Positions 155 to 63,100 of a stretch of 64,000 bases of DNA are shown piece after piece. The position numbers were made by a program, and so were the translations under genes. This DNA is from Hydrolagus affinis (lineage: Eukaryota), in assembly GCA_012026655.1 (NCBI GenBank), contig JAAILG010001228.1, positions 1-64,000 on the forward strand, written 5' to 3'. The notes below the pieces were generated by a model. The model saw nothing but the letters and a program-made list of their open reading frames with translations, had not been told where the DNA came from and made no database searches. Every line of letters begins with the position of its first letter. The first letter of the stretch is position 1.

Positions 155-3100
155 GTAAGATGTTCTCCTTTCTTAAGGCACATTCATTACAACCCGAGTT
201 TGAAACCAAAGGTGTTTTCAATCTTTTGGGAGTAGCATCTTGGCAACATTTGAAGTCATTATCTGACCTAGAAGCAGGGGAGGTGGAGGTTTGTGACTGA
301 TATCTGGATCATACGGTACTTGCAAATCCACAATCTGCAACTCTAATGTAATACAATTTTCACTGAAGTATTTCCTCAATGGTTACATTTCCATTGACTG
401 GAACAAAAGTTGTTTGTACAGTATATATGTCCACTGTGAAATGTTTTAGCATTTGTAAAGTTTGTGAAATAACCTTTCTTACAAACAGAGGAATTTGGAC
501 TTTTTGTCGGTAATGGGATTCATTGTGATGTTGAAGAATCTATGGGCTTTAATTAATCACTACCATCTGAGTTAGACTCATCTAAGATAGACTAATTGTA
601 TCAATTATTTAACTTTCATTAATCTCCTACACTGGTCTCTGCAGGGTTTCTGATTGGTGGACATGTTCTGCGGCTTTTTCATGGCCATGATGAGTGCTTG
701 ACTTTCCCTCTTCCAGCTCAGAGAAAGGAGGGGCAGAGGTAAGCTTACCTATTTGACCTTACATTACAGTTTGCAGTAATCATTTTATTCTTGTGACACA
801 ATTCAACCTGAAGCAGATTGAAGCAGTAGAGATGAAACATATTTTTGACAATTTGTCTAATTAATTGCAAATCCAAAATGATAGATAGGTTTGAAGGATT
901 TAACCAAGCACTTGTGATCTATCTGCAGAACGGTTCACTTTGAAAGTGGAGAAGCAGGTGCCTGTGCCAGATCGCTATGGCGTCTGGAACCTTTACGGAT
1001 AAGGTAAAGTTTATGTAGAAACCTCAAACACATTTACCTTTTGAATCTTTTGTTCTTTACTCAGAAGGTAAATTAATGACTAAATAGGTGGCTAGGAAGA
1101 GTGAATGAGGGCAGAACCCTGGACTCATTTAAAAAGCAGCTTGAAATTTGGAACACTCTTCGTCCATCATTCCACCCCTTGCCCCTTACGTCCCCATCTT
1201 TAGGTCGCGCCTGAAGACCTTCTTCTTCGACCGTGCCTACAGTCTCCTCCCTATCCCCCCAGCTCGGGGTCATTATCCGCCTCTGTGAAGCGCATTAGGG
1301 CACTACCCTGCATAAGGTGCGCTGTATAAATGCGGGTTGTTTTGTACTTGTTGATGTTAGACTTGTTGAGATACCTTTTTAAAAAATATATATATATTTT
1401 ACTGCATATCTATCTGTGGCAATGTTGGAAATTACCAAAATGTGATGGGTATCATAGTATTTGTGCTTTGACTATTATTTAGCTGGAGTGGAAGTCATAT
1501 AAGATGGGGCCAGGCTTTCCGTTTGCGGCACATCACAACAGGTCTATATCTGGGCTTGGCTGAAGATCAAGGTCTTGTGCTGCTGGATCGAGAAAAGGCA
1601 GACACCAAAGCATCATCATTCTGCTTCCGAACATCAAAGGTACTATAATGGGCAAGATATTATAATAGTTATTAGAGAAGTGTATTATGAAGGGGTGATT
1701 AAAGGTATTGAGGGGTGCAAGTGTGATTCAATCTTCATACATCTGCAGAGCTTGGCTGCAACTAATTTACATTTGTACATTTATGCAATGAATTTCTCAG
1801 TGTATTTCACCCACAGAATATAGTCATTTCACTTTACAGTAGATTCTATGAAGACCTTTGAGACATCATGTCTTGAAGACATGATAAGGCTCAATATCAA
1901 ATGCAAGGATTGTTATTACTATATGATGATCAGAAATTTGCAATGTTCTAAATATTCTGCTAAACTATTGTTGTTTTTATTTTTTGCTCTTGTTTAAATC
2001 CCAAAGGATAAACTGGATTTGGGTATGCGGAAAGAGATAGATGGCATGGGAAACCCTGAGATAAAGTATGGCGATTCAATTTGCATAATACAGCACCTTG
2101 CAAGTGGCCTATGGCTGACATACTGTGCTCCAGATGCCAAATCATCACGTCTGGGAACTCTGAAACGCAAAGTATGTACTAATTATTAGCACCAGATTTG
2201 TGTTTGGGAATTTTCATGTCATTTAATCAACATGTGGAAGTATTATTCTGGATTACATTGTCTGAGAACTTAATCTTTTGAAGTTTTGTGTACTGAATTG
2301 CTGTACAAATGGACTTTACATAGCTCAGTTGGACGGTACACTACATTGCTTGCGCACACCAGCCCACCGAAGTTATGCTAATTCCCCTACCCCTCAATTT
2401 GTGAGTGCGTTAATTTCATTCAGAGTGATGAGAGAGGTTATATAAATAGATTCACTATCTCTGGGCAAGGGGAAGGGTTAAATCACTATCTTATGACCTC
2501 TGCGGAAAAGTGCACCAGTGAATAACGGGTAAGGATAGGAGAGTTCCTGGCTGTGATTTTACCCAATATGTTAAATAATCTCCTATTCATGAAATAAAGA
2601 GGAGGGTGGTAATTAAACAAGAAATGCTCACTCATTCCGAATTGATTGTTCAAATTACAAAAGGATGTTCATTAACTAGGGAATTGATTGTTTTCTCATT
2701 TCGTCACTTTGCCAATAATTTTGAACGAAAACCTAATTTGCTCTTTACTAAAAGATAAGTAGTTCTTACCACCAGGTGAGGCAGAAATTAGTGCTTTGGA
2801 ATTACACTGCCAGATGTTTGGAATAATTAATATTTGCTAAATACTGATCCCAAGTTGCAACTTCTTTGGAACTTATGTTTTTTATATGCAATACATAAAA
2901 TCATGTGGTTTTCAAAAGAACAGACGTATATGGCTTTTAAAAGTCGAGTTCTAATGCATGATTTCAATTGGTAATCCTTAAACACAAAAACAACCATGTG
3001 CTGAGAATAAATTCTCATTTTCATTACAGGTAATATTGCATCAAGAAGGTCACATGGATGATGGTGTAATCCTGCAACGATGTCAAAATGAAGAATCTCA

Positions 3101-6100
3101 GGCAGCTCGTATTATACGGAACACAACAAGTCTCTTCAATCAGTTTATCAGGTACTTGATAAGGAAATAAATACCGTTTCCAAATATTCTTTCAGATATT
3201 TACCTATCATTCTACATCCTAAATTATAAGACCGTAAGGTCATCTTATCTCCCCTTCGCCTTGCCATTGCCGAGGCAGCACTTTCAAACATCATCCTGAT
3301 GTGAAAGGTGCTCAATAAATGTAAATTGTATTGTGTAATTAACATTCGTCTTGGAATGGAAAAAAATCATGGAAACCCTGGAGCATGCAAAGAGCCGGAA
3401 ATTTTATATTTGTTGTTAAAGTGTACTCAGTACTAACATTGACAAACCATTCAAATTATGTTAAGAGGCTAGGCTACAGTTTTAACTTATGCTGCCAGAG
3501 CCCTGTTTATACTGCACCTTAATGCAGGGCTTTTGATAACAAATGTTTATTCTAAACACAATCCTAAAATTATTTGCTTTGAAATTTTAGTGCAACAACT
3601 GTTTTGAGGTTTACATGATTCCTAAATGATAGAATACAAGGTTTAACAGGCAATCTGACTGGAATGAATGTATTGAATTATAGCTTTCAGATGAAACATG
3701 TTAAATGCAATCATTTAGCAGGTTTATAGCTTTGTTTTTGTCTTATATTGTTACCATATAGTTTACCTTTGAGTTTTTGTTTTAAAACTCGCTGTATACT
3801 GTATGCCACATGTTTTAATTCACTCTTGAAAAAACAAGCTACAGTACTTCACATCAGATGTGTTTCAAAATTGTTAGCTGTTTGTTTCAATTGCTTAGAA
3901 AATACTTATAGACACATTTCTACAGGGGCCTCGATTATATGAGTGCAAATGGTAAAACTGCACCAGTCACATTGCCCATGAAAGAAATTGGGGAAGTTTT
4001 GAATGACCTGATCACTTATTTCCATCTACCGGAGGAAGAATTGGAACATGAAGATAAACAGAACAAACTGCGCTCCCTCAGAAACAGACAGAATCTATTT
4101 AAAGAGGAGGTGAGGAAATAATGTCCAGATTGTGTTGAGTGTTTTCATGTTCAGCATTCAGTTCTTGTTTACGGTTTTGTGACCTTTTCAAGGTATGCAA
4201 CGTGCGTTGTTTTATTGCAAAGACCTGCCTTTCGTCTCGGGACACAATCCGTGGTGATGTGATAAACTGTGGACAAATCACAAAGAGCACTTCATTACAT
4301 CAGCTTAAATTAAATATACCCCATCAACATAGCCCATCACTGTGCACCTGCTTCCAAAGAATATGTGGTATAGGAGAATGATTCTAGGCATATTATTTCT
4401 GCTGCTCAGATGCTTATAGTAGCATCCTTGCTACCATCCCAAATTAGGTTAAATAACTCAACACACAGGAGATGAAAACTATATGGTTCAGCTACTTACC
4501 AATTAAGCATGCTGATCCATTAGAGAAGCTCACCTGCTCATGTTTTTCATAAAGATCAGCCAGCTCAGCTTATTCATTATATGAACACCACCCACCAGGA
4601 CCAAAGTTGTGAAATGAGATGTGTTAAAACAGAAACAGACATTATTTGAATATTCAACTCAACGCTACAGGTTTTGGACGTGAATCTGAGATCAAACTCA
4701 TGGTAGCGCACCAAAGTTACAAGGAGCTCCATCTGAATGTTGCATATCAGCCTCACCAATCCTCACAGTTCCTCCCAGCTTCTAATGGACAAGAAGGAGC
4801 CAGTCGGAGCTCATCCATTCTGTTGAAGGACAACAGTGAGATAATATCTGATAATTTGGGGTGATATTGTGGCATATTTGTCTTGTACATAAAAATTGAT
4901 TTGCTGCCTCTACAAGGCTCTGCATACGGTAAAAGGTACAGACGAAAATAAATTGTTTGGGGGAGGGATTCTAGACACGCTGGTATATATCAATTAACTA
5001 AGGGTTAATGCATTAGTAGTACTTCAACCTTTGCCTTGTACTGTATCTATATTTTCCATGATTTAACAAAATAGCATGAGCAATGTGAAACTTAAGCATT
5101 TATCCGTCAAATGAGTCCAACTGATTTAAATTCCCTTCCCTTCAATAAATGTATTCTGCTGCAGAAAAAATACAAATAGTCAGCAAATGCAATATACTTC
5201 AGGCTCATTGAAATTCATTTCACTGACCCAACACTTGTGAAATATTTGAATATTTTGTGGCTAACCCTTTCTAACTTACTTTAAGTAGTTTTCAGCACTG
5301 CATTTACACTTTCAACAAAATCACATGTTTCTATTAAGTCAACACTGTTGCATTTTGATAAATGTGACAGATCACTAAACTCTTGCAGGAGTTTGACATC
5401 ATAACTTATTGCAAGCGATATTTTAGATGGGAACATTTAGAAAATTATAGTCACACAGAGAGAAAGATTATTTTCAATGTGAAACATAATTATTTGTGTG
5501 CCTGAGTGTGTGTGTAGATATATATAGATACAGTATATACAGTAATTGCAGTTTTGTCACTTAACCTTTAAATAATCTATTGCCTTCTTCAACGATGGCA
5601 GTGCTGCTGGGTAAACCACCAAAGTGTAGTCAGTTATTTTAGTGATGCTTGACACTCATGTGACCGTGTTGGAATATCAGGAAAATTCTTATTAAATATT
5701 AAATAAATCATTCCATTGATGACTCTACCATTAATTATGTTACCTAAAGTAGACAATCACAAAGAGCTGTGAGATCGTGACAGCAAAATGCGCAAATAAG
5801 TAAAAGGTGCATGTAAGTTTGCATGTAACTTATTTAGAACAAATTTATAATGTGCACCATGTTGGCTGCCTTATTTAATTCGTATTCTCTTCTACATTCA
5901 CATAAAATGTCTCCTTTCAATCTAAGCAGATGTTTTAAATGTGTTGTCATACTAAAAAGTCTAACAATGCCCCCAAGTGATTGACAAATATAAATATAGA
6001 TTCAACATCTATATTTTACGTTTGTTGATATGAGGCATGTCAGACGAGCAAAACATCCAGCAGGATTAAACTGCATTCCTGCACGTGCTCTTATGATATC

Positions 6101-48100: not shown

Positions 48101-51100
48101 TTCGAATTCAGTGAAGTAAATTTAAAATTCATACAATTTAGGATTTTCAAAAAAAAACATAATTTTGGTAAGTGTTTGCGACCATGTTATGTATACATTC
48201 ACTTATTGGCCATGATCTGTTTTGCAGTGGATGATGTTCAGGTTTCATGCTATAGGATCATGAGCTGTTTGTACACGTTAGGAATTGGAAAGAATGTCTA
48301 TGTTGAAAGGTAAGAAACACAGATTGCAATCATCATTGAGACTTTGAAATCATTTGTGTTTAAAGAACAAAGTAATACTACAGATCCATTAGAATGTACA
48401 GCAGAATTGGTTTGTTTTCTGCATCCAAAAAAGGAATAAAGAAACACAAAGCAAAGTAGATTTGTGCTCTCATATATTTTAATAACCTGTATCCAAATAA
48501 AAAGGGCTGCTTACTATGCCACTATAATTGAACGTTGAAATGTTACTCCAAAAATGATTGGCACTCCGCTAATTGCCAATTCAGCAAAGGGAATCTGCTT
48601 TATTGTCGTTCATTTATTTTGACATCTAACCATCTAAATGTGGCTTTGTTACACCAGTATAATATCTGTTGCCACACATTTGTAATTTGCTTCATAATCT
48701 TTTGCAATAATAATTCCTAAAGAAAATAATATATTGGTTATTTAAATCTACGACTGTTTGTGGGACACTACTGTGCGCAATTGAACACTGTGTTTCATCC
48801 ACATGTACAAATCAGATCACTTTACAGTATATTCTGTGAAGCACTCTGAGATGTTTAGAAAATGTGAAAAGCCCTATATCAAATGCAAGGATTATTATTG
48901 TTATTATTATTGGAGACTTAGTATGTTTTTTTTGTGTAGTTTGTTAAAGTGGTTGTGCTTTGAACATTCTGAATGAACAAATGTATATGTTTTATTCCAA
49001 CTTGAATTTGCTGATAGGCACTTCGGGTATGGATCGCCTCGTTTACATACCCCCCCAAAAAAAATCCTTGCATTTGATATAGCACTTTTCAAGTCTTCTA
49101 GACATCTTAAAGTGCTTCACAGAATATACTGTAAAGTAAATTGACTGTATATTTGTGGGTGAAACGCGACAGCCAATTGCGCACAGCAATGTCCCACAAA
49201 TGGAATCCAAGATGTGTTCAGAAAAGCAACCAATCACTTCACAAAATGCTGGCCAACGTTTCACACACAAATAAAACAGCCCGTGTCCAGTTCATCAGTC
49301 ACCGCATTGTATTCAAGTGTGTTGTAATACAGTTCTAAAGTTTTTCTAATCAGTTAATTTATTTGGACTTACCGTGGCTAGTTGCTCTCTTTGTGTTTGA
49401 ACCCAGGATGTCACTTTACCTTTCATCTTTACTCTTGTGTCCTAGGCAACGACCAGTCCTGGGGGAGTGTTTGGCAACGCTGGCAGCAGCCATGCCAGTA
49501 GCTTTCCTTGAAACGTCTCTCAACCAGCACAATCCAAAGTCAGTTTTCAACACAAAAACTCCTCGAGAACAAGCCAGTACGTACCACGGTCTTTAATGTG
49601 GATTTTCATTTTATAGGTTTAATTTATTTGTTAAATTGAAGCATTATATTGTTTGGTTTTTACAATCCATTAAATCATGTCGAAAGAGTCGCAGGGAGAA
49701 ATACCAGAAATATTGAGCAATTCAACATTTGTAATCCTCTTCCATTAAAGATCATCAATACACATCCTCTGGTGCTAGAACTTAATGAGTTTAATGCACT
49801 GTTGTATCAATCATATATGGCAGCACTCAATAGTTCCCAAAAACAAAATTCCCCAAAACAAAATCACTATGGGTTCTCAGCCCAGCTACTCAAGAAAAAA
49901 AAACACAAAGCTCGTAACATCACAGTCTCACGTCCCTCTGCTGTGGAGTCCTGTAGCTCAGTGGTTAGAGCACTCACCTGGCAAGTGAGAGACCTGCATT
50001 CAATTCCAAGCAGGGCGAAACCTTGGGCAAGTTTCCTTACTCCACACACTTGATAATAATCCCTCAAAAAAAACAATAATACATTGGTCATTTTCAGCTG
50101 TTTGTGGGACACTGCTGTGTGCAATTGGCTGCAGTGTTTTGCCCACAAATATACAGTTAATTCTCTTTACAATATATTCTGTGATTTTGGCAAAGCCAAA
50201 TCTAGGCTTTGACATGTCTAGAAGAAGTGAAAAGCGGCATATCAAATGCAAGGACTATTATTATCTGAACCCTGATGCAGGAAAGCAAGCTAGTTTGTGT
50301 ATGGTATTATGACTTTCTACTGTGCATACAGCATTTCCCACCTAGTTCAGGGCATCTGGTGGTCATTTTTTGGGGGCCAAATATCGTGATGAATTATAAA
50401 CACCGTGCACTTAGCAACACAGTTTTTCTATGGAAGTCTGTTTTGCATTTGACTGTTTCTCATTTACTAGATCAAATAACAAAGGAATTGTGTGGATGAA
50501 AACTGTCGGCATTGTGTTTACTTTGCAATTTTGCAATTGATGCAGAAAGGTCAACGTGTATTGTGACGTTACGTCCTAATGTGCCTATTGAATTTTCAAC
50601 ATCTTCTACATGGTGACCTTTATTTCAGACAGATTATTTGTTTATTGATGGTGAATACAGTGATGTGATATAAACCCTTGCGTGCCTAGTTCTAGGTTTG
50701 CCAAACACTGTTGAGGAGGTGTGTCCAGAGATTCCCCATTTGGAGAGGTTGATGAAGGATATCAAAGAACTGTCCGAGTCTGGAGCTCGATACACTGAGA
50801 TGCCCCACGTCATTGAAGTAATTTTACCCATGCTGTGTAATTACCTCTCCTATTGGTGGGAGCGAGGCCCCGAGAGCACATGTGAAGGACCTCACTGCAG
50901 CACAGTCATTTCTGAGCACCTTAGTTTACTGCTGGGCTATATCCTGAAAATCCTCAACAATAATCTGGGCATTGATGAAGCATCCTGGATGAAGAGACTT
51001 GCTGGTAAATGCACAGCAGATAGCTGTAACTCTTCTGTTATTGATGCATTTAATATTAGAGCATGTTTTTCTTAAAAAAAGTGTATGATGTTTACAAACC

Positions 51101-54100: not shown

Positions 54101-57100
54101 TATTGTTAAAACTACTCTCTTGTGCTTCTCACCTTTACTGGTTGAGATTTACAGTTCAGTGATTTTTTTTAAATGGAGAATGCCGTGCGGGTGAAAAAAA
54201 CGGCAGCGCGACTTTAAAGCCTTAATAGTGGCAAGCCGATAACCCTAGACTCTACTAGCGACAAACCGATAAACCTAGACTCTAATAGCGACAAGCCGAA
54301 ATACTACAACTGCACGACAATGTGGGTTATCGGCTAGCGTTATCGGCTTGCCGCTAGTAAAGCTTTAAAGTCACGCTCCATTTTTTTCACCTGCTTGGCA
54401 TCCTCCATTTTAAAAAGAATTATTGGACTATAAACCTCAACCGCAGCATCATGACTTCAAGCGCAGCATCTACCAGTAAAGGTGAGAAGCGCAAGAGAGT
54501 AGTTTTAACAATAAGTACCAATACAATATTCTGTTATTATCTGTTATTATTTATGCATGTACAAATGCTCCACCACTATTGTTCCGGATAAGCTCCGGTT
54601 TATCGAATGGGGACTTTTTTTTTTGGCGTGACGGTTATACAGAAGTGCCGGTTCATCGAGTCACGGATAAACAGACTTCTACTGTACTGAGTTTTAAGTG
54701 CATGAATTATGTTTTGATTGTACTAATTGTTTTAATGATTTAATACATAATTTATCACTAATGGTCTTATTTAACTTTTCTTTTATGTTTCTTCTTTTTT
54801 AACGCAGTTTAAACGAGTTGGCCTAAAGGTCAGACTGCATGACTCTTGCAATAGTTCCACACTTGGCTTGGCAATTTAAATTGGTCAAAGCGCTCCCATT
54901 TGCAGTATACGTAGATCATAGCGTGTGCTATGCTTTTTGTCTCTCATCTGAAATCTCAACAGAAGGCTAAATGTGCTTGCATCATTACATCATACAGAGC
55001 AATTGGCTGCCACATTTCACCTACATTTCACCTACAAATATTCGCTTTACAGTATATTTTGTGATGCGTTTTGAGATGTCTAGAAGTCGTGAAAAGCTGT
55101 ATCAAATTCAAGGATTATTATTATTAGAAGAGTGAGCTGCAGTATAAACATTTGTAATGTATTTGTATCAAACTATGTCTTCCAAAGGCAAATCATATAG
55201 AGGAGAATACATGACAGGTTGCAAATACTGTTTATGAATATTAGCATATTATAAAGATAGCATAAAATCTGGTTATTAGTGGGCCATTGCTGAACACATT
55301 TGTTGCTTCATACAAAATAAACATTCACTTAACTTTACAGAAAAACTGTTGAAGCACCTTGAGACGTGGCAGGCTCTCATTATCAAATGCAAGAATGTTT
55401 ATTATTTTAATGCTTTACTGCCACAATTGAAGCTGAATCATCACACAAAAAAGAAATGGTTACAACAAACCTAGCAGAGTGAAAATGTTGTGCCACTTCA
55501 AATGTAGATTAACCAAGTGCAAAATGAAATTACCACTAGAAAGCTTTTATAAGAAATAAGTCAAATGGAAAATAAAATAAGTTTAAAAATCTTTGTTTTA
55601 AAGAATTTTGCAGGATTTAGTGTAACTGCCAGATGATACTTTAAAAAAGATATTCGGATGAGCTCCTTCCAAGAAATATGCAAGGATTGTTAGTATTATA
55701 AGATGTAGCATTAGAATTCATCTTTGTTGAAGTTGCCTTCTAGACATGGTGACATTATGTTTTTTCGGGGGTTGTTTTGTGATGAAGTGAGCCTGGGAAA
55801 GGAAAATGTTGCGGATGCTCAGAGCATCACTGACCTAAAGCAATGGTGGAAAAACTTTGTCTTGCTAATTGCTGATACAGATGTTAAAACACTTGAACTA
55901 CACACAGATTTAATTATTTTCATGCGAAAGCCACATTGCAGCTAGCTTGTCATAAGCACAGCTTATCAATACATTCCATTTGTCTTGTTAACATTATCAT
56001 TTTGTGTTGTTTGGATTTTTTTTCTAAGGTTGTTCCATAGATCACACAGAATATTATAAATTATGCAGTGGTACAGTGTTCTTACTTGTGTGAGAGCAAT
56101 ATTAGTTAAATAAAATCTAAATGCAAAGATTTTCATTATTTTTGCTTAAATCAGAACAATGCTAAATAGCTCAAGAAACAACCAATATTTTATTTCAGAA
56201 TGACATTTTTTATATATACTAAATGGGTGTTGGCAATTCAAAATTGATTTCTAGCCTTTCATAAATATGTGCAAAAATTCTCTTGTCCCTATCCCTCTCA
56301 GTCTGAGTCTACACAGCTTTGTTTGATTCTATTAAATGTTTAAATGGATTGCATCACCAACACTTTCTGACTTGTGGGGATTTGCAGATTATTCAACCAT
56401 TGTGGTTTAAATGACACTGAAGCCAATGAAGTGTGAGAGTATATAAATGGGAAGAGTGAATTTAGTGTATTTTATATAGTGTAGCTCAGTGGTTAGAGAA
56501 CTCGCCTCACAAGCAAAAGGATCGGGTTTGATTCCTGTGCAGGGTGAAACGTTAGGCAAGTTTCCTTACCGTACGTCTCTGTTTACCTAGTAGTAAATAT
56601 GAATCCAGTTTATTAGTCGATTGTCTGGAGGTAATAATTCCTTAAAAATAATTTGCTCACTCAATCCAGTTGTTCGTGAGACACTGCTGTACGTGATTAA
56701 CTGCCCTATTTCATTCACAAAATATACAGTCAATTCAGTTTACAGTATATTCTGTGAAGTGCTTTAAAACATCTCAAAGACGTGATAAGGTGCTATATCA
56801 AATGCAAAGAGTATTTTAATAATGGTGTTTCCTAATAGCTTCAGATAAGCAATCTTTGTGTCAAAGCATTTTACATGACGATTGTCCTTTTTGAAACTTT
56901 CATTAAACATCTTATTTTCTGCCAGCTTCATCTGGTTAAGTTCAGAACACAAGGTGACTTTATTGGAGACTTTATGTTACCTGCACAGCGGTGAAGGCTG
57001 TTGATACATATTACTGGATGGATAACACATCCTCTTTAAACCTCTATCCTACAATATAGTCACAGAGACAAATTGTACTAATAACATATTGGGACAACAA

Positions 57101-60100
57101 ATTAATGAAAAATATCTAATTTTTTTCACAAAAATGTAATTTCCTTTAGGCTGGAGGGCAAAGCCAGGAAAGGAAGAAAATAATACGCAGAGGTGATTAT
57201 TACTCCATACAGACCTCATTGATCGTTTCTGCCCTTAAAAAGATGCTTCCTATCGGCTTAAATATGTGCACGGCTGGAGACCAAGAACTCATCTCATTGG
57301 GAAAACTGAGATACAGCATGGCAAGTTCTCTTTTTAGCTCAGTATATTTAGCTCATCTTCACGGTTTCCAGACATAAAAATAGTCTCTTATTGCTTTTGA
57401 GTATTTTGATACATTAACAAAATTCATAATTATGGAAAGGAGTTTAGTCTTTTCTTTCCTAATGTTCCTCCTATTCTTTTGGTGTTTTAAATATGGATTG
57501 CTCCATTTTTTAATGTGATAATATGTTTAAATATTTATGTATTCATTTTAAGCAGCTTTTGAACTGTATTCAGAATATTTTAATATTGCACTGGCATTCC
57601 GCAGAGATTTCAGTAACTGTGCTTCCATCCTTGGGAAGTGCCTCTGTCTTGAACCCTCACTTTCTCTTTAAATCTCACCTAAAAACCTACTTATTCATCC
57701 ACACCAATGGGTACCGGTATTTCCCTCCTACACCACCCCACTCCATTGCTTTACACCCAACACTTCCAGTGTCTTGGGATGTCCTCCAGACATGAAATGG
57801 TTCATGTAAATGCAATTTGTTGATGATGTGAAACATTTGGTGAAGGTCAGATTTTGTTTTCTGTTGTGTTAATTACAATTGTGTTATTCCTATCCACAGA
57901 AAGATACAGATGAGGAGGTTAAACAGTTCCTTGCAAATAATCTGCACCTACAGGAAAAGGTATACAAATCTGTTACCATTTTGATGCATGTTAAATCCTG
58001 CATTTCCAGATGTATTATGTTCTAGGGTTGGAAGTGATATTACACATTATGTTTAATTTTTCCTTTAATTGCTTGATGATATGCTATTCTTGTGTAACTG
58101 ATTTTTCCATCTCCCATTCAGTCTGAAGACCCAGCTGTTCGATGGCAGCTAAACCTGTACAAGAATATTACCAAACCCGAAGAATTTGTTAATCCTGAAA
58201 AGATTGTAGAGCGAGTGCAAAAGATTTCAGCCGCCGTCTACCACTTGGAACAGGTAAAATAATGTCTTGAGACATTGCTAATTGTAAAGGTACTAAAATC
58301 TGTTTAATGAGGTGTCTATTGAATAAACCAACAACCCAGTGTTTTACTGTCTCTATTCCACAGTTAATGATGTGTTTTCTTTAAGGTCGAGCAACCTTTG
58401 AGATCAAAGAAGATTGGATGGCAAAAACTCTTGTCGAAGCAACGCAAAAGAGCTGTGGTTGCCTGCTTCCGAATGGCACCATTATATAACTTGCCAAGGT
58501 AGGAGTGGTGCAATATTTTTCTTGGATTCACAAAGAAATCCAACATTGTACATGTTTTGCCCACAAAATGTATAGTCAATTCACTGTACGGTATATCCTG
58601 TGAAACGCTTTGAGACGTTGTGAAGGCATGTACCAGCAATTAGCAATTAGCGATGTACCAGCAATTATCACCTTGGTTCGTTTTAAAAACTCCAGCTAGC
58701 TTGTTTTTTAAAAAAAATTATTACAATTGCAGCTTATATATGAAAGTTTATAGTGGATGTCAGCAAACAGTAAAATTACATTTTTGGAGCACCTTTCACA
58801 TTGGGAGAACGTCCCATGGCGCTGGATATGTCTCTATTTATAGTTTATTAATTTACCGACTTGATCTTTATTGATTTAGTTTTCTTCCTTACCCACCCCC
58901 ATCTTCAAAAGCATGAAATTAACTATTCCCTATTAAAGAGGGTGAATAATCAACCCGATTCCAAGCCTTTGCCACTTGGTTAGTGCTCACTGAGAAGTAC
59001 TCAACAGGCTTGTTTAGTCATTGTGCTCCACTCCTCCTTAGAGGGTTGTGCATTAGTTTTGTTTGGCAATAAATGTGTTCCTGCTCTTCACAGCCAGGTC
59101 AATGTTAGGAACTCGTACAGAAAATTGCTTTGGAAATCCACAGCCTCTTTGTTCAATTATATTAATAGATTTGCTAACAGAGTTTATGTTAGTCTCTACA
59201 TTTTAATAAATATAATCGTGAAAATTTATTTTGCAGGTACTGCATTACACTGTACCCACATCTGTGTACTTTCAAAAACAATTCCAACAAATAATTGCTT
59301 AAACATTTAATCCAAGAATTCAATTAATTGACAAATTCTTATGTCATTAATAATGACGTAAAAAAAACTATTAAAGGAACTGTGCTATTAATTGACAATA
59401 CATTGAGGTTCCAAATCTACACCAACAAAGCTATGCTTTTGAGTTCAATGCAAAAAAAAACATTATTCGTTTTCCCTTAGACACAAAATTAACAATTACT
59501 TCCTGATCTCCTATCAACATCTTTGGCTGGAAAGTGTATATAAGAAAACTGACTTTGAGAAGCGTATTTTCTATTTGACGGTAACGTAACTATTGAAACT
59601 ACCTCCTCTCCTTTACAAACCTTGTCCTCAATAATTCCTCCACTGTGCTCCTTACACCAGTTTGTGTAATGTATCAATTGTACAGAATCTGATTGGTCAG
59701 TCTCCCCCCCCATGAGCAAAATTCTAGTTGTAACAAATGCAGAAATATTATATAAGGAAAAAGGAATGAATCTCTGTCCTGTTTAGAAGATTTTCCAGTA
59801 ACCATGTTTGTTCAGATATGATAAAGGAATTCCAAGTAGGAATAGCCATTTTTTTTTGATGATCCCATATGTGTGTGTGAAAGCTCACAAAACACATAGT
59901 CACTGCACTTCACGGTATATCTTGTGAAGCACTTTGAGACATGTTCCCAATGCAAAAAGTGCTAGATGAACATTTCTGGAGGCTGGTGTACATCACAACT
60001 AAAAACTTTCTACAACTGGAAAAGAGTCTTGTTAAGTCATTGTTCATTTTAGGATAGCATTCTTGCTTTTTGGTGTCTAAAACAACTTTCCGATTCATAT

Positions 60101-63100
60101 TGCCTTTTATTCATCATGAAAAAGTATTCTTTACCTAGATGAATGTGATCATGACAAACCTTTGACCAATCGGAGGACTGGAATTGTACAAAACGCTACT
60201 AATGGTCCTTGTCCGTTGACATAACAATGTTGTTATTAATCTACTAAAGTGTGTATCTCCTCCTTCCTTCTGATCTTCCTGTCCCCTCCAACTCCCTAGG
60301 CATCGGGGTGTTAACCTCTTTCTTCAGAGTTATCAGAAATCATGGATAGAGACAGAGGAGTACACATTTGAGGAGAAACTAATTGAGGATTTAGCTGTAA
60401 GTACTGGCCTCTGTGCACGGCTTCCGCCTCCAGCACACATGGCCATACTGCATTCTGCATTCTGTTGCCAAGCTGTCTACATCGCTTACCACTTCTATGT
60501 CTGTCAATTAGAGTAGGTTGATTGGGAGTTGGTGGGGAAGGGGAGCCCCGTTTGTCTATTCTGCTGCTGCTTTGCACTGGCCATTAAAATGAAACTAATT
60601 ATTGGCCACTGGCCCTTTTGAATGGAAAGAATTTTTCACCTGATCATTCTAGCTGATATTAGCTTCCCTTTAGCACAGTACAATATTTGAAAGATATTGC
60701 CTCTTAAGTACTTCAATGAAAAGAGCAGAAATGTTATAACCTTAGCAGTTTCCTGACAGTGGATAGCACATATGAAGATCCAGCAGTAAATACAATAGTA
60801 TGAAGTAAATCATTTACAGTTGATATTCCTAGTTTGGCTATGAAGCCGCATTGTATATCATAGATATTCAGGCATTTACATCACAGTGCAGCATATTACT
60901 AAGAATTAATTGTGATGAATGCTAACAAATGATATAGGAACGCCATCTCACATAATGGATCAGCAGGGTATGTTATAGGGTCTAAGAGAAGGGGTGGGGG
61001 ATAATGTGATGTGCTGAGCTTTCAGAGTCAAACGCAAGCAGTTCATACCAAGGTCATCCAAATACTGTACACATCATTTGAGCCTTGTAACAAGCTCTTG
61101 AGGCATCTGTTAGCTTATTCTGCAATGCAATAGAACCTCACTTTGTTGTCCCTTCAATTATTAGGAGAAATTATGACAGTACAGTATGCAGGCTGCTTTT
61201 TAGTGGGTGTAAAACTGTGGGTGATCAAAATCCCACCCTCACTATTATGGGCAAATCAAGTTAGTCTACTGACTGCCGTTGATAGTGAACTTCAATTTTA
61301 ATTTGTTTTTGAGCTGCAAATTTCACTGAAGCTGTTTATGAGTCTAGGCTGTGCTTGTATGCTTCACTATGGTTGCCGAATGTGGTGGAAATAAGTGCAC
61401 AGATTATTAGGCAATTTACAAACATCATTACTGAAAATTTGATTTGGAAGGATTATTGCATGGAATCTTAAAACAGATTTTTGAACATATCTGATAATTT
61501 ATCAGATTATGGAGGTAAATTTTATTTCATATCGCCTGGTGTTATTGGGTTATGGCAATAGAGACATTCTATCCTGGAATTTACAATGTTCAAAAGTATT
61601 ACTGTGTAATCAAAGATAATAAGGTGAGGCAAATGCTACATGGTTTAAGGATAGCATCGGTCACTACGAGTGGAGTGTAATAAATGATTCATGATGTCTG
61701 GTTTCTATGATTCCATGTTATACTTAGTGCCCCTCCTCAGATCAGATAAGTTGTAATATTGTCAACATCCACAGGCTACATTGTTCTGTCTTTCAAATAG
61801 AATGCTAAAGTTTGAAGGTGGAAATAAAAGTATGAAAATAAAAACAATACTATTTATTGACATCATTCAATTGAAAAGTTTAATTAATTAACTTGTCTTG
61901 ATCAAATGAGCCGATTGAAAAGGCCAGGTGAGTTCCTACAGTTCAGAGCATAATGCCAAAAGTAAACGAACAGTAAATTTGTTAATACAGTATATAATAA
62001 TGAAATACTTTTGTATTGGATTTGCTGAATCACACACACATTTTTCTTCTGTTAGAAAGCTTGGCAACTACATTGTGAGGCTTCATTTTGTACAGAAGTC
62101 ATTTTTGATCATTCTTCAAGGAGATAAGGTTATCAGCTTTTGAAGGTGAAAAGGAATAACATTCTGTTGTCTTTTTCACTACTTATCTGGACTCTTGTTC
62201 TTTACTCAGTACTGCTCTGTTTCATCAATTCTGCCAATTTATTATTAAACTGTGTTACATCTAACATGAGCATGCAATTCACAGATAACCTTTTCAAAAT
62301 GCATTCATTTATTCATAAGTTTAGTTAGAAATTCAATACTGAATGGTAATGCATTTACTTAAATTCACAAAGAAAACTGTTAACAATGGCAAATTCTTCA
62401 ATCTGTAAATTTGTGATGACAATTTTTTTTACCTTTTTAAACATAATGCAGGGATGTTTATTGTACTGTACTAATTATCTAAAATAAGACTAACATTAGT
62501 TTATAAGTGATACTAATGGTTTCTTAAACCTGACTTCTACTAAATGGTTATACATACTTGCATAACATTGTATTATATTGTAAAATATAATTTTAAACAT
62601 CTGAATGTATGTAGAAATCTGTTACAAAGTCAGAAGAAGAGGAAGAGAATGACAAGAAACCTGACCCGCTTCATCAGCTCATACTACACTTCAGTTGTAT
62701 TGCCCTCACTGAAAGGAGGTACTTTTATACACCATTTCATAATCTTATCCTCAACAACAACAGAATTACATTATAGAGCCCTTTCACGTCGGGAGGACGT
62801 TCCAAGGTGCCCAACAGTCAGGGGTTGGGAACTGAGCATGGGGGAGGGGCATGGTAGGGGTGAGGGGAGGTAGAGAAGTGGGAGGGCAGCTGAAGGCTGG
62901 GTCGAAAAGGAGGTTCTTGAGATCGGCCTTGAAGGAGGCAAGGGAGGAAGTGAGGCTGAGGGACTGTGGGACAGAGTTCCAGAGTGCGGGGGCAGAGAAG
63001 CTGAAAGCCTGGCCACTGATGGTCAGGCAGAGACAAGGAGCAGACTGGAGCCCGCTGAATGGAAGGAACGGTCAGGTTGGCAGGGAGTCAGCAGGTCAGA

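What the first reader, a model, noticed from the sequence alone, without database searches (positions are those of the whole stretch)
59481..60396. Duplicated, mutually exclusive exon pair right after the calmodulin-binding helix
Seen: two paralogous exons with the same phase (2 to 0) and canonical splice sites, encoding [33 protein letters not shown] and [32 protein letters not shown] (shared H..N.FL.SYQ..W.E....FE pattern). Including both (197 nt) or neither shifts the frame, so only one-of-two gives protein. Recalled, not verified: mammalian RyR3 has an A/B exclusive exon pair here with an HKINN-type variant. Inference: the switch predates the split of bony and cartilaginous fish. It swaps an acidic segment for a basic/hydrophobic one next to the CaM site. 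Neither exon appears in the + strand ORF track.
Basis: partly seen in the sequence, partly recalled or inferred. Interest (0 to 1): 0.8.

Follow-up and report, generated by a model that had tools for sequence, protein, structure and literature searches.

The report
Ancient either-or exon pair in RyR3
Two look-alike exons of the calcium-release channel gene RyR3, only one of which can be used in any one message, are real here and shared with mammals, but the pair is already present in mammalian data, so it is an expected feature, not a new one.

Summary
Exon A (59481-59580, 100 nt) and exon B (60300-60396, 97 nt) have AG/GT sites and the same phase. They lie between the calmodulin-site exon (58386-58498) and the next exon (62615-62718). 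The gene is a RyR3 orthologue.

Exon A matches 1 of 177,635 distinct PDB sequences: mink RyR3 (9c1e/9c1f), residues 3495-3523, directly after the calmodulin-site exon (3457-3493). That chain has no B-type segment. So the A type replaces B in an expressed mammalian cDNA.

Six unnamed genomic fragments also carry 33-codon A-type exons with the same boundaries.

Spliced contigs of a related species show only the B form. A single-cell RNA run of this species has a depth peak on exon A, but no A junction was listed. Use of A in this animal is therefore inferred, not shown.

A 2022 paper lists RYR3 among human genes annotated with a tandem-duplicated exon substitution. The site of that event is in closed supplements.

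Verdict: a real, anciently conserved, mutually exclusive pair, already known in kind. Its function appears unstudied. The only RyR3 structure is of the A form.

The parts
58386..58498 (+). Constitutive upstream exon that encodes the calmodulin-binding segment ([37 protein letters not shown] plus 2 bases of an Arg codon)
   Evidence: It aligns to mink RyR3 3457-3493 (57.7 bits), to RyR2 3577-3613, and to the 30-residue RyR1/RyR2 peptides 2bcx_B and 6y4o_B. A spliced contig of run X1 covers 58384-58496 and joins to 60300.
59481..59580 (+). Exon A: the 100-nt alternative exon of HKINN type (net charge +2, 8 aromatic residues by my count of the peptide)
   Evidence: Its only PDB match is mink RyR3 3495-3523, E 6e-4. 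Six unnamed genomic fragments hold 33-codon orthologues, with 15-16 of 33 residues identical and 13 of 33 columns invariant. X3 depth is 9.91 in bin 59492-59640 against 2.85 and 0.82 in the flanking bins, at single-copy DNA depth in X2. No junction into it was listed.
60300..60396 (+). Exon B: the 97-nt exon of HRxVN type (net charge -4), the form shared with RyR1 and RyR2
   Evidence: It aligns to RyR2 3614-3645 (43 bits) and RyR1 3647-3677 (27.5 bits). Run X1 has joints 58498>60300 (depth 1775) and 60396>62615 (depth 2020). Run X3 has 2 reads, from 1 start, on 60396>62615.
62615..62718 (+). Constitutive downstream exon ([34 protein letters not shown]..), entered in phase 0
   Evidence: It aligns to mink RyR3 3533-3562 and RyR1 3684-3713. 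An X1 contig piece covers 62615-62718.
60275..60296 (+). Left arm of an inverted repeat that covers the polypyrimidine tract of exon B. This is a candidate looping-out stem; its function is not shown.
   Evidence: pair I1: 22 nt, 82% complementary to 60524-60545. A fold of 60276-60545 pairs the two arms, z -2.18, with 5 of 200 shuffles folding as well.
60524..60545 (+). Right arm of the same inverted repeat, 128 nt downstream of the donor of exon B

Best explanation
This is the orthologue, in a (probably cartilaginous) fish RyR3 gene, of an old tandem exon duplication that is spliced in a mutually exclusive way. Each mRNA carries either exon B or exon A. Exon B is the ancestral, acidic form shared with RyR1 and RyR2. 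Exon A is a RyR3-specific form, basic and rich in aromatic residues.

Exclusivity is enforced at least by the reading frame. A+B gives a stop five codons into B, and neither exon gives a frameshift (shown). Such messages would be removed by nonsense-mediated decay (inferred).

The swapped 32-33 residues lie directly after the calmodulin-binding segment, at the start of the block that the mink RyR3 cryo-EM study refined together with the central solenoid. The switch most likely retunes how the calmodulin site and the bridging solenoid couple to the channel core. It would do so in a cell-type-specific way (inferred, not tested).
For: - Exon anatomy and frame.
- The gene is RyR3: the 103-aa exon 50701-51009 scores 166 bits to RyR3, 139.6 to the best RyR1 and 135.3 to the best RyR2.
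- In mink RyR3 the order is calmodulin-site exon 3457-3493, A-type segment 3495-3523, next exon 3533-3562, with no B-type segment. A therefore substitutes for B in an expressed mammalian clone.
- A-type exons of exactly 33 codons, preceded by R (the ag| boundary) and followed by V (gt), occur in 6 further unnamed genomic fragments.
- The B form is spliced in run X1.
- Run X3, stranded, has its highest non-repeat internal bin on exon A: 9.91, against 4.83 on exon B and 0 to 4.66 in intronic bins. X2 shows single-copy DNA depth there.
- The A segment falls in residues 3487-4015, the block refined with the Csol (PMC11452665, passage seen).
Against: - No junction into or out of exon A was listed for this species. 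Only 15 of 29 joints were printed, ranked by support, so read-level A joints may be hidden or may be absent.
- X1 has zero depth on exon A, though contigs drop rare variants.
- The X3 peak could come from a few duplicated molecules or from internal priming.
- A/B similarity alone is not significant window-wide: 19 of 60 shuffles reach the observed score.
- The donor of exon A (gtaacg) is weaker than that of B (gtaagt).
- The search of 1.84 billion representatives gave only 1 hit at E<=0.001. A 33-residue query has little power there, so this says little either way.
Confidence: 0.85

Rival explanations
1. Exon A is a relic in this lineage. The duplication is old and A is used in mammals, but in this fish B is constitutive and A is no longer spliced in.
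For: Only B-form joints were seen: X1, and 2 reads in X3. The donor of A departs from consensus at position +5.
Against: Exon A keeps an open frame, both splice sites and its 33-codon length. It shares 15 of 29 residues with mink and 15-16 of 33 with six other fragments, which neutral decay over this distance would not leave. The X3 depth peak sits on exon A.
Confidence: 0.09
2. Exon A acts mainly as a poison exon. It is included together with B, giving a stop five codons into B, and so lowers RyR3 output without producing an alternative protein.
For: Reading B after A gives ASGC*. A 719-nt intron between A and B puts no steric bar on using both.
Against: A poison exon needs no conserved peptide. 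Yet the A peptide is conserved, and it is translated in place of B in the mink RyR3 protein used for cryo-EM.
Confidence: 0.04
3. Chance: an intronic open frame that happens to resemble exon B and has AG/GT at its ends.
For: Window-wide shuffles reach the A/B score in 19 of 60 trials. An unrelated stretch at 56891 scores 30 to exon A.
Against: Exon A has a specific match to mink RyR3 at the homologous position, the only hit among 177,635 PDB sequences. Orthologous 33-codon exons have identical boundaries in 6 fragments. None of 200 intron-local shuffles reached the score.
Confidence: 0.02

Closest known systems
Mink RyR3 cDNA as expressed for cryo-EM (PDB 9c1e/9c1f; PMC11452665)
   Same: It carries an HKINN-type segment at 3495-3523, directly after the calmodulin-site exon and in place of the HRxVN-type segment. 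15 of the 29 aligned residues are identical to exon A.
   Different: It is a single mammalian cDNA isoform, so it does not show the alternative. The words splice, splicing and exon occur 0 times in that paper's main text. The C-terminal half of the segment diverges from the fish exon.
Human RYR3 tandem exon duplication substitution event (GENCODE v40 set analysed in PMC9741552)
   Same: Same gene and same class of event: homologous neighbouring exons that substitute for each other. The paper states that more than 90% of such human events have orthologous events in teleosts and that about two-thirds were already present in the vertebrate ancestor (passages seen).
   Different: The main text gives neither the site nor the age of the RYR3 event. 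The terms shark, lamprey, cartilaginous, gnathostom-, jawed and Chondrichthyes occur 0 times in its main text.
RyR1 ASI and ASII alternatively spliced segments
   Same: They are developmentally regulated splice variants of a RyR that alter channel activity (passage in PMC5840707).
   Different: They are cassette exons that are skipped or included (exons 70 and 83), not homologous substituting exons, and they lie at other positions.
Mutually exclusive exons of the invertebrate RyR genes (Drosophila Ryr, C. elegans unc-68)
   Same: Tandem exon duplication substitution in the same gene family. PMC9741552 lists RYR3/Ryr/unc-68 together.
   Different: That paper treats them as convergent events. 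I did not compare their positions with this one.

Membership tests
Tandem-duplicated mutually exclusive exon pair | Two neighbouring exons that are homologous to each other | tested here: met
   BLASTP gives 9/18 identities, E 1e-5. hhalign of the A-type profile against B gives probability 80.8% over 18 columns. None of 200 intron-local shuffles reached the score. The signal is weak window-wide: 19 of 60 shuffles reach it.
Tandem-duplicated mutually exclusive exon pair | Same phase and near-equal length, with canonical splice sites on both | tested here: met
   100 nt and 97 nt, both entered in phase 2 and left in phase 0, with AG...GT on both.
Tandem-duplicated mutually exclusive exon pair | Including both exons or neither destroys the reading frame | tested here: met
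   B read after A gives ASGC*. The next exon is read out of frame if both are skipped.
Tandem-duplicated mutually exclusive exon pair | Mature transcripts carry exactly one of the two exons, and each form is observed | tested here: inconclusive
   The B-only form was seen in X1 contigs. The A-only form was seen in the mink RyR3 protein. For this species there is only a depth peak on A in X3, and no A joint was listed.
RyR3 (vertebrate ryanodine receptor type 3) gene | Closer to RyR3 than to RyR1 or RyR2 | tested here: met
   Exon 50701-51009 scores 166 bits to RyR3, 139.6 to RyR1 and 135.3 to RyR2. The calmodulin-site exon scores 57.7 to RyR3, 52.9 to RyR2 and 47.8 to RyR1. No tree was built.
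Orthologue of the mammalian RYR3 A/B exon pair | The A-type exon is at the same position in a mammalian RyR3 | tested here: met
   Mink 9c1e_B 3495-3523 lies between the calmodulin-site exon (3457-3493) and the next exon (3533-3562).
Orthologue of the mammalian RYR3 A/B exon pair | A B-type exon is also present in the mammalian RYR3 gene | not testable with these tools
   No mammalian RYR3 locus or B-type RyR3 protein could be reached. My recollection that the canonical human protein is B type is not a test.

The most novel reading that the evidence does not exclude
The A/B choice is a functional switch, specific to cell type and more than 400 million years old. It changes how calmodulin (or S100A1) and the bridging solenoid act on the RyR3 core. 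If so, the RyR3-specific properties measured on the mink clone, including the only RyR3 structure, would be properties of the A isoform and not of the gene as a whole. In this fish, a tissue with very high RyR3 expression would use B, and other cell types mainly A.
Probability: 0.3. Interest if true: 0.55.

Novelty: already known. Interest (0 to 1): 0.3.

Why it matters
The exon pair shows that the segment right after the calmodulin site of RyR3 has been kept in two alternative versions since before this lineage and mammals split. That argues that the choice matters for channel regulation.

There is also a practical point for RyR researchers. The only RyR3 cryo-EM structure uses a clone with the A-type segment, and its paper does not discuss splicing. 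The same is probably true of the functional work done with that clone. Comparisons of RyR3 with RyR1 and RyR2 around the calmodulin site may therefore mix gene differences with isoform differences.

As a genomic finding it is ordinary. It is an orthologue of an event already present in mammalian cDNA and annotation.

Tried and rejected
- **Representative search with exon A.** It returned 1 hit only, P0001. A 33-residue query against 1.84 billion proteins has little power, and full-length RyR3 representatives may carry B. I drew no conclusion about breadth.
- **The search for homologous proteins with P0001.** It returned 5 of 5 candidates. All are unnamed genomic ORF fragments, and none is derived from a transcript.
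- **Genomic ORF around exon A.** No candidate was found.
- **Genomic ORF around the calmodulin-site exon.** This was meant as a census of what follows ...LYNLPR in transcript fragments. It returned 13 of 13 candidates: 12 are genomic read-throughs and 1 is a PDB peptide. None of the 12 continues into an A- or B-type exon, so the test gave nothing.
- **The listing of cluster members.** It gave no names or accessions, so the taxa of P0001-P0006 remain unknown.
- **A third paralogous exon.** The best other window hit to exon A, at 56891 with score 30, is within chance: 7 of 60 shuffles reach 30. Rejected.
- **Splicing-factor motifs.** There is one TGCATG in 58300-62750, at 61457 and far from both exons, and no YCAY cluster. 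No regulator can be named.
- **Rfam on 58300-62750.** 0 matches.
- **Fold around exon A.** z +0.40, so there is no structure signal.
- **Literature.** Six searches and passages from nine papers found no description of the function of this RyR3 exon pair. Marziali 1996 and Jiang 2003 are not held. I recall only that they describe RyR3 splice variants. I saw nothing of them beyond their reference-list entries.
- **dN/dS of exon A.** It could not be estimated, because no nucleotide sequence of an orthologue was obtainable.
Full report
**What is in the sequence.** The + strand of 58300-62750 holds four exons of a ryanodine receptor gene.
- The upstream exon, 58386-58498, encodes [37 protein letters not shown] and ends with two bases of a codon.
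- Exon A, 59481-59580, is 100 nt. It has acceptor ...ttttcccttag and donor gtaacg, and it encodes [33 protein letters not shown].
- Exon B, 60300-60396, is 97 nt. It has a long pyrimidine tract, acceptor ...ctccctag and donor gtaagt, and it encodes [32 protein letters not shown].
- The next exon starts at 62615 in phase 0. It ends at 62718, because the gt is at 62719-62720.

Both A and B supply the third base of the split Arg codon and end on a codon boundary. If A were followed by B, B would be read from its first base as ASGC*, a stop at the fifth codon. If both were skipped, the next exon would be read one base out of frame. So is the charge swap: A has K+R 5 and D+E 3, and B has K+R 3 and D+E 7.

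**Is the A/B likeness more than chance?** BLASTP aligns the first 18 residues with 9 identities, E 1e-5 for the single comparison. The ungapped BLOSUM62 score is 25, with 9 identities over 32 positions.
- In 200 shuffles of the 1.8-kb intron upstream of B the best score was 23, so 0 of 200 reached 25.
- Over the whole 64-kb window the score is unremarkable. It is reached in 19 of 60 block shuffles with query A and in 13 of 60 with query B.
- An unrelated stretch at 56891 scores 30 to exon A, and 7 of 60 shuffles reach 30.

The paralogy argument therefore needs the shared register, phase and splice sites, and the comparative evidence below. A profile of seven A-type exons against B gives hhalign probability 80.8% over the same 18 columns.

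**Which gene.** The 103-residue exon at 50701-51009 scores 166 bits to RyR3 (mink, 9c1e_B 3092-3194), 139.6 to the best RyR1 and 135.3 to the best RyR2. The calmodulin-site exon also scores best to RyR3: 57.7 bits, against 52.9 for RyR2 and 47.8 for RyR1. I take the gene for the RyR3 orthologue. I built no tree.

**The decisive comparison.** Exon A searched alone against all PDB chain sequences matches 1 of 177,635 distinct sequences at E<=10. That sequence is RyR3 of entries 9c1e/9c1f, residues 3495-3523, HKINNFFLSTFQRVWLEKVNEKTQYDRLI, E 6e-4, with 15 of 29 residues identical.
- The same chain aligns to the upstream exon at 3457-3493 and to the downstream exon at 3533-3562. The three are collinear and adjacent.
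- Exon B matches 39 sequences at E<=10. Thirteen are RyR2-type (42.5-43.2 bits, for example RyR2 3614-3645), 25 are RyR1 (27.2-28.7 bits, for example 3647-3677) and one is a chance hit. The RyR3 chain is not among them.
- So in that RyR3 protein an A-type segment stands where RyR1 and RyR2 have the B type.

The paper behind these entries (PMC11452665; passages seen) says the protein is mink RyR3, stably expressed in HEK293 cells. The words splice, splicing and exon occur 0 times in its main text. [quoted passage not shown] The third covers Bsol and Repeat3&4, residues 2170-3462. The A-type segment therefore sits at the start of the 3487-4015 stretch of the second mask. The exact domain boundaries are in its Supplementary Table 2, which I could not see.

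**Other species.** The search of 1.84 billion representatives with exon A gave one hit at E<=0.001, P0001 (60 aa, 34.5 bits). A word-indexed search with P0001 gave 5 of 5 candidates, and a cluster look-up added P0006.
- All six are unnamed Logan ORF fragments that read from intron into exon. A pyrimidine-tract translation is followed by R, then a 33-residue A-type exon (for example [33 protein letters not shown]), then V from the gt donor.
- Exon length and both boundaries are the same as here. 15-16 of 33 residues equal exon A, and 13 of 33 columns are invariant across the seven sequences. B shares only 6-9 of 32 residues with the seven A-type sequences (9 with the window's own exon A, 6-7 with the six fragments).
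- Their flanks fall into two groups, so more than one lineage is represented.
- The N-terminal half (H..NN.FL..Y.H.WL) is the conserved part, and the C-terminal half drifts.

**Transcript evidence (the single read-laying run, 4 runs, likeness at least 90%).**
- Run X1 holds contigs guessed to be RNA, from a related organism. Its exon pieces differ from the window at 6 of 113, 1 of 99 and 4 of 104 letters. It covers only the upstream exon, exon B and the downstream exon, at depth 1775-2020. It carries joints 58498>60300 (printed as 58496>60298, cut +2, GT..AG) and 60396>62615. Its depth over exon A is 0. This shows the B form is made. Contigs cannot show that a minor A form is absent.
- Run X3 holds raw single-cell polyA reads, of which 100 are at least 99% alike to the window. 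All genic reads lie in one direction, and there are many intronic reads.
  - Depth is 17-18 in the upstream exon and 30-33 in the downstream exon.
  - The bin holding exon A (59492-59640) has 9.91, against 2.85 and 0.82 in the flanking bins.
  - The bin holding exon B has 4.83.
  - The other non-repeat intronic bins range from 0 to 4.66.
- X2 is DNA-like and has ordinary single-copy depth (49) on exon A, so the peak is not a repeat artefact.
- Taken at face value, A is used at least as much as B in that sample, and A plus B roughly adds up to the flanking exons.
- However, no joint into or out of exon A was printed. Only 15 of 29 joints were shown, ranked by support, and X2 repeat contigs fill the list. 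The only X3 exon joint printed is 60396>62615, with 2 reads from 1 start. The peak could also reflect a few duplicated molecules.
- Use of exon A in this animal is therefore suggested, not shown.

**How it probably works.**
- Shown: the frame makes A-only and B-only the only productive choices.
- Inferred: A+B and skip-both messages are removed by nonsense-mediated decay. The 719-nt A-B intron rules out a steric mechanism.
- A possible RNA element. A 22-nt inverted repeat, 82% complementary, pairs the pyrimidine tract of exon B (60275-60296) with 60524-60545 and would loop out the whole of exon B. The fold of 60276-60545 forms it, with z -2.18, and 5 of 200 shuffles fold as well. Another note of this scan proposed this (s1-907315). 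It is CU-rich against GA-rich, I could not test its conservation, and I treat it as a lead. No comparable signal surrounds exon A (z +0.40).
- No RBFOX-type or NOVA-type motif cluster flanks either exon.
- At the protein level, the swapped segment follows the calmodulin-binding segment within two residues. The 30-residue RyR1 peptide 2bcx_B aligns to residues 6-35 of the upstream exon. That this entry is the calmodulin complex is my recollection.
- The most likely role is therefore to retune calmodulin-dependent regulation, or the coupling of the bridging solenoid to the core. This is inference and nothing here tests it.

- It states that more than 90% of the 236 human events have orthologous events in teleosts and that close to two-thirds were present in the vertebrate ancestor.
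- The site and age of the RYR3 event are not in the main text. The supplements are closed, so I could not verify that it is this pair. The mink protein makes that likely.
- I recall, but did not verify, that the canonical human RyR3 protein has the B type.
- Six literature searches and passages from nine papers turned up no study of what this pair does. The classical RyR3 splice-variant papers (Marziali 1996, Jiang 2003) are not held.
- RyR1 ASI and ASII are cassette exons at other sites (PMC5840707).

**Taxon.** I did not establish the organism. Earlier AI follow-ups on other pieces of this genome call it a chimaera-like cartilaginous fish. They are unverified. What my calls show directly is that it predates the split between this genome's lineage and mammals.

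**Verdict.** This is a genuine, anciently conserved, mutually exclusive exon pair of RyR3, already represented in a mammalian cDNA, in the PDB and (by listing) in human annotation. It is therefore already known in kind, with modest interest. The open points are the use of exon A in this species and the function of the switch. One side observation is useful: the only RyR3 structure is of the A isoform.

Noticed in passing
window 60275-60296 and 60524-60545: A 22-nt inverted repeat, 82% complementary, brackets exon B. It pairs the exon's pyrimidine tract with a GA-rich stretch 128 nt past its donor. The fold gives z -2.18, with 5 of 200 shuffles folding as well. Low-complexity complementarity has not been excluded, and conservation was not tested.
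   Followed up: partly
window about 58553-58826 and 59886-59942: Copies of a very abundant interspersed repeat lie in both introns. Summed contig depth reaches about 300,000 in X2, hundreds of partly fitting reads appear in X3 and X4, and many false joints link the two copies. Rfam has no match in 58300-62750.
   Followed up: no
window 62632 (downstream exon, acidic run): One X2 contig leaves out 3 letters inside the Glu-rich run (depth 44.3 of 99.3). This is an in-frame length difference between individuals or close relatives (table 4).
   Followed up: no
window 62689-62747: A low-depth X1 contig (depth 54, against 1942 for the spliced one) runs 29 letters past the donor at 62718 and then diverges. 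It may be unspliced RNA, an alternative donor, or DNA in the run (tables 7 and 8).
   Followed up: no
window 61267-61445: The X2 contig lacks 177 intronic letters and has 7 other letters in their place. This is an intronic indel relative to the window (tables 5 and 5c).
   Followed up: no
window 56891-56986 (+): An open 32-codon stretch scores 30 against exon A, higher than exon B does. It lies upstream of the calmodulin-site exon, and I saw no splice-site context. Its score is reached in 7 of 60 shuffled windows, so it is taken as chance.
   Followed up: yes
PDB 9c1e/9c1f and PMC11452665: The only full-length RyR3 structure carries the A-type segment. The paper's main text never mentions splicing or exons. 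Comparisons with RyR1 and RyR2 near the calmodulin site may therefore be isoform-specific.
   Followed up: partly
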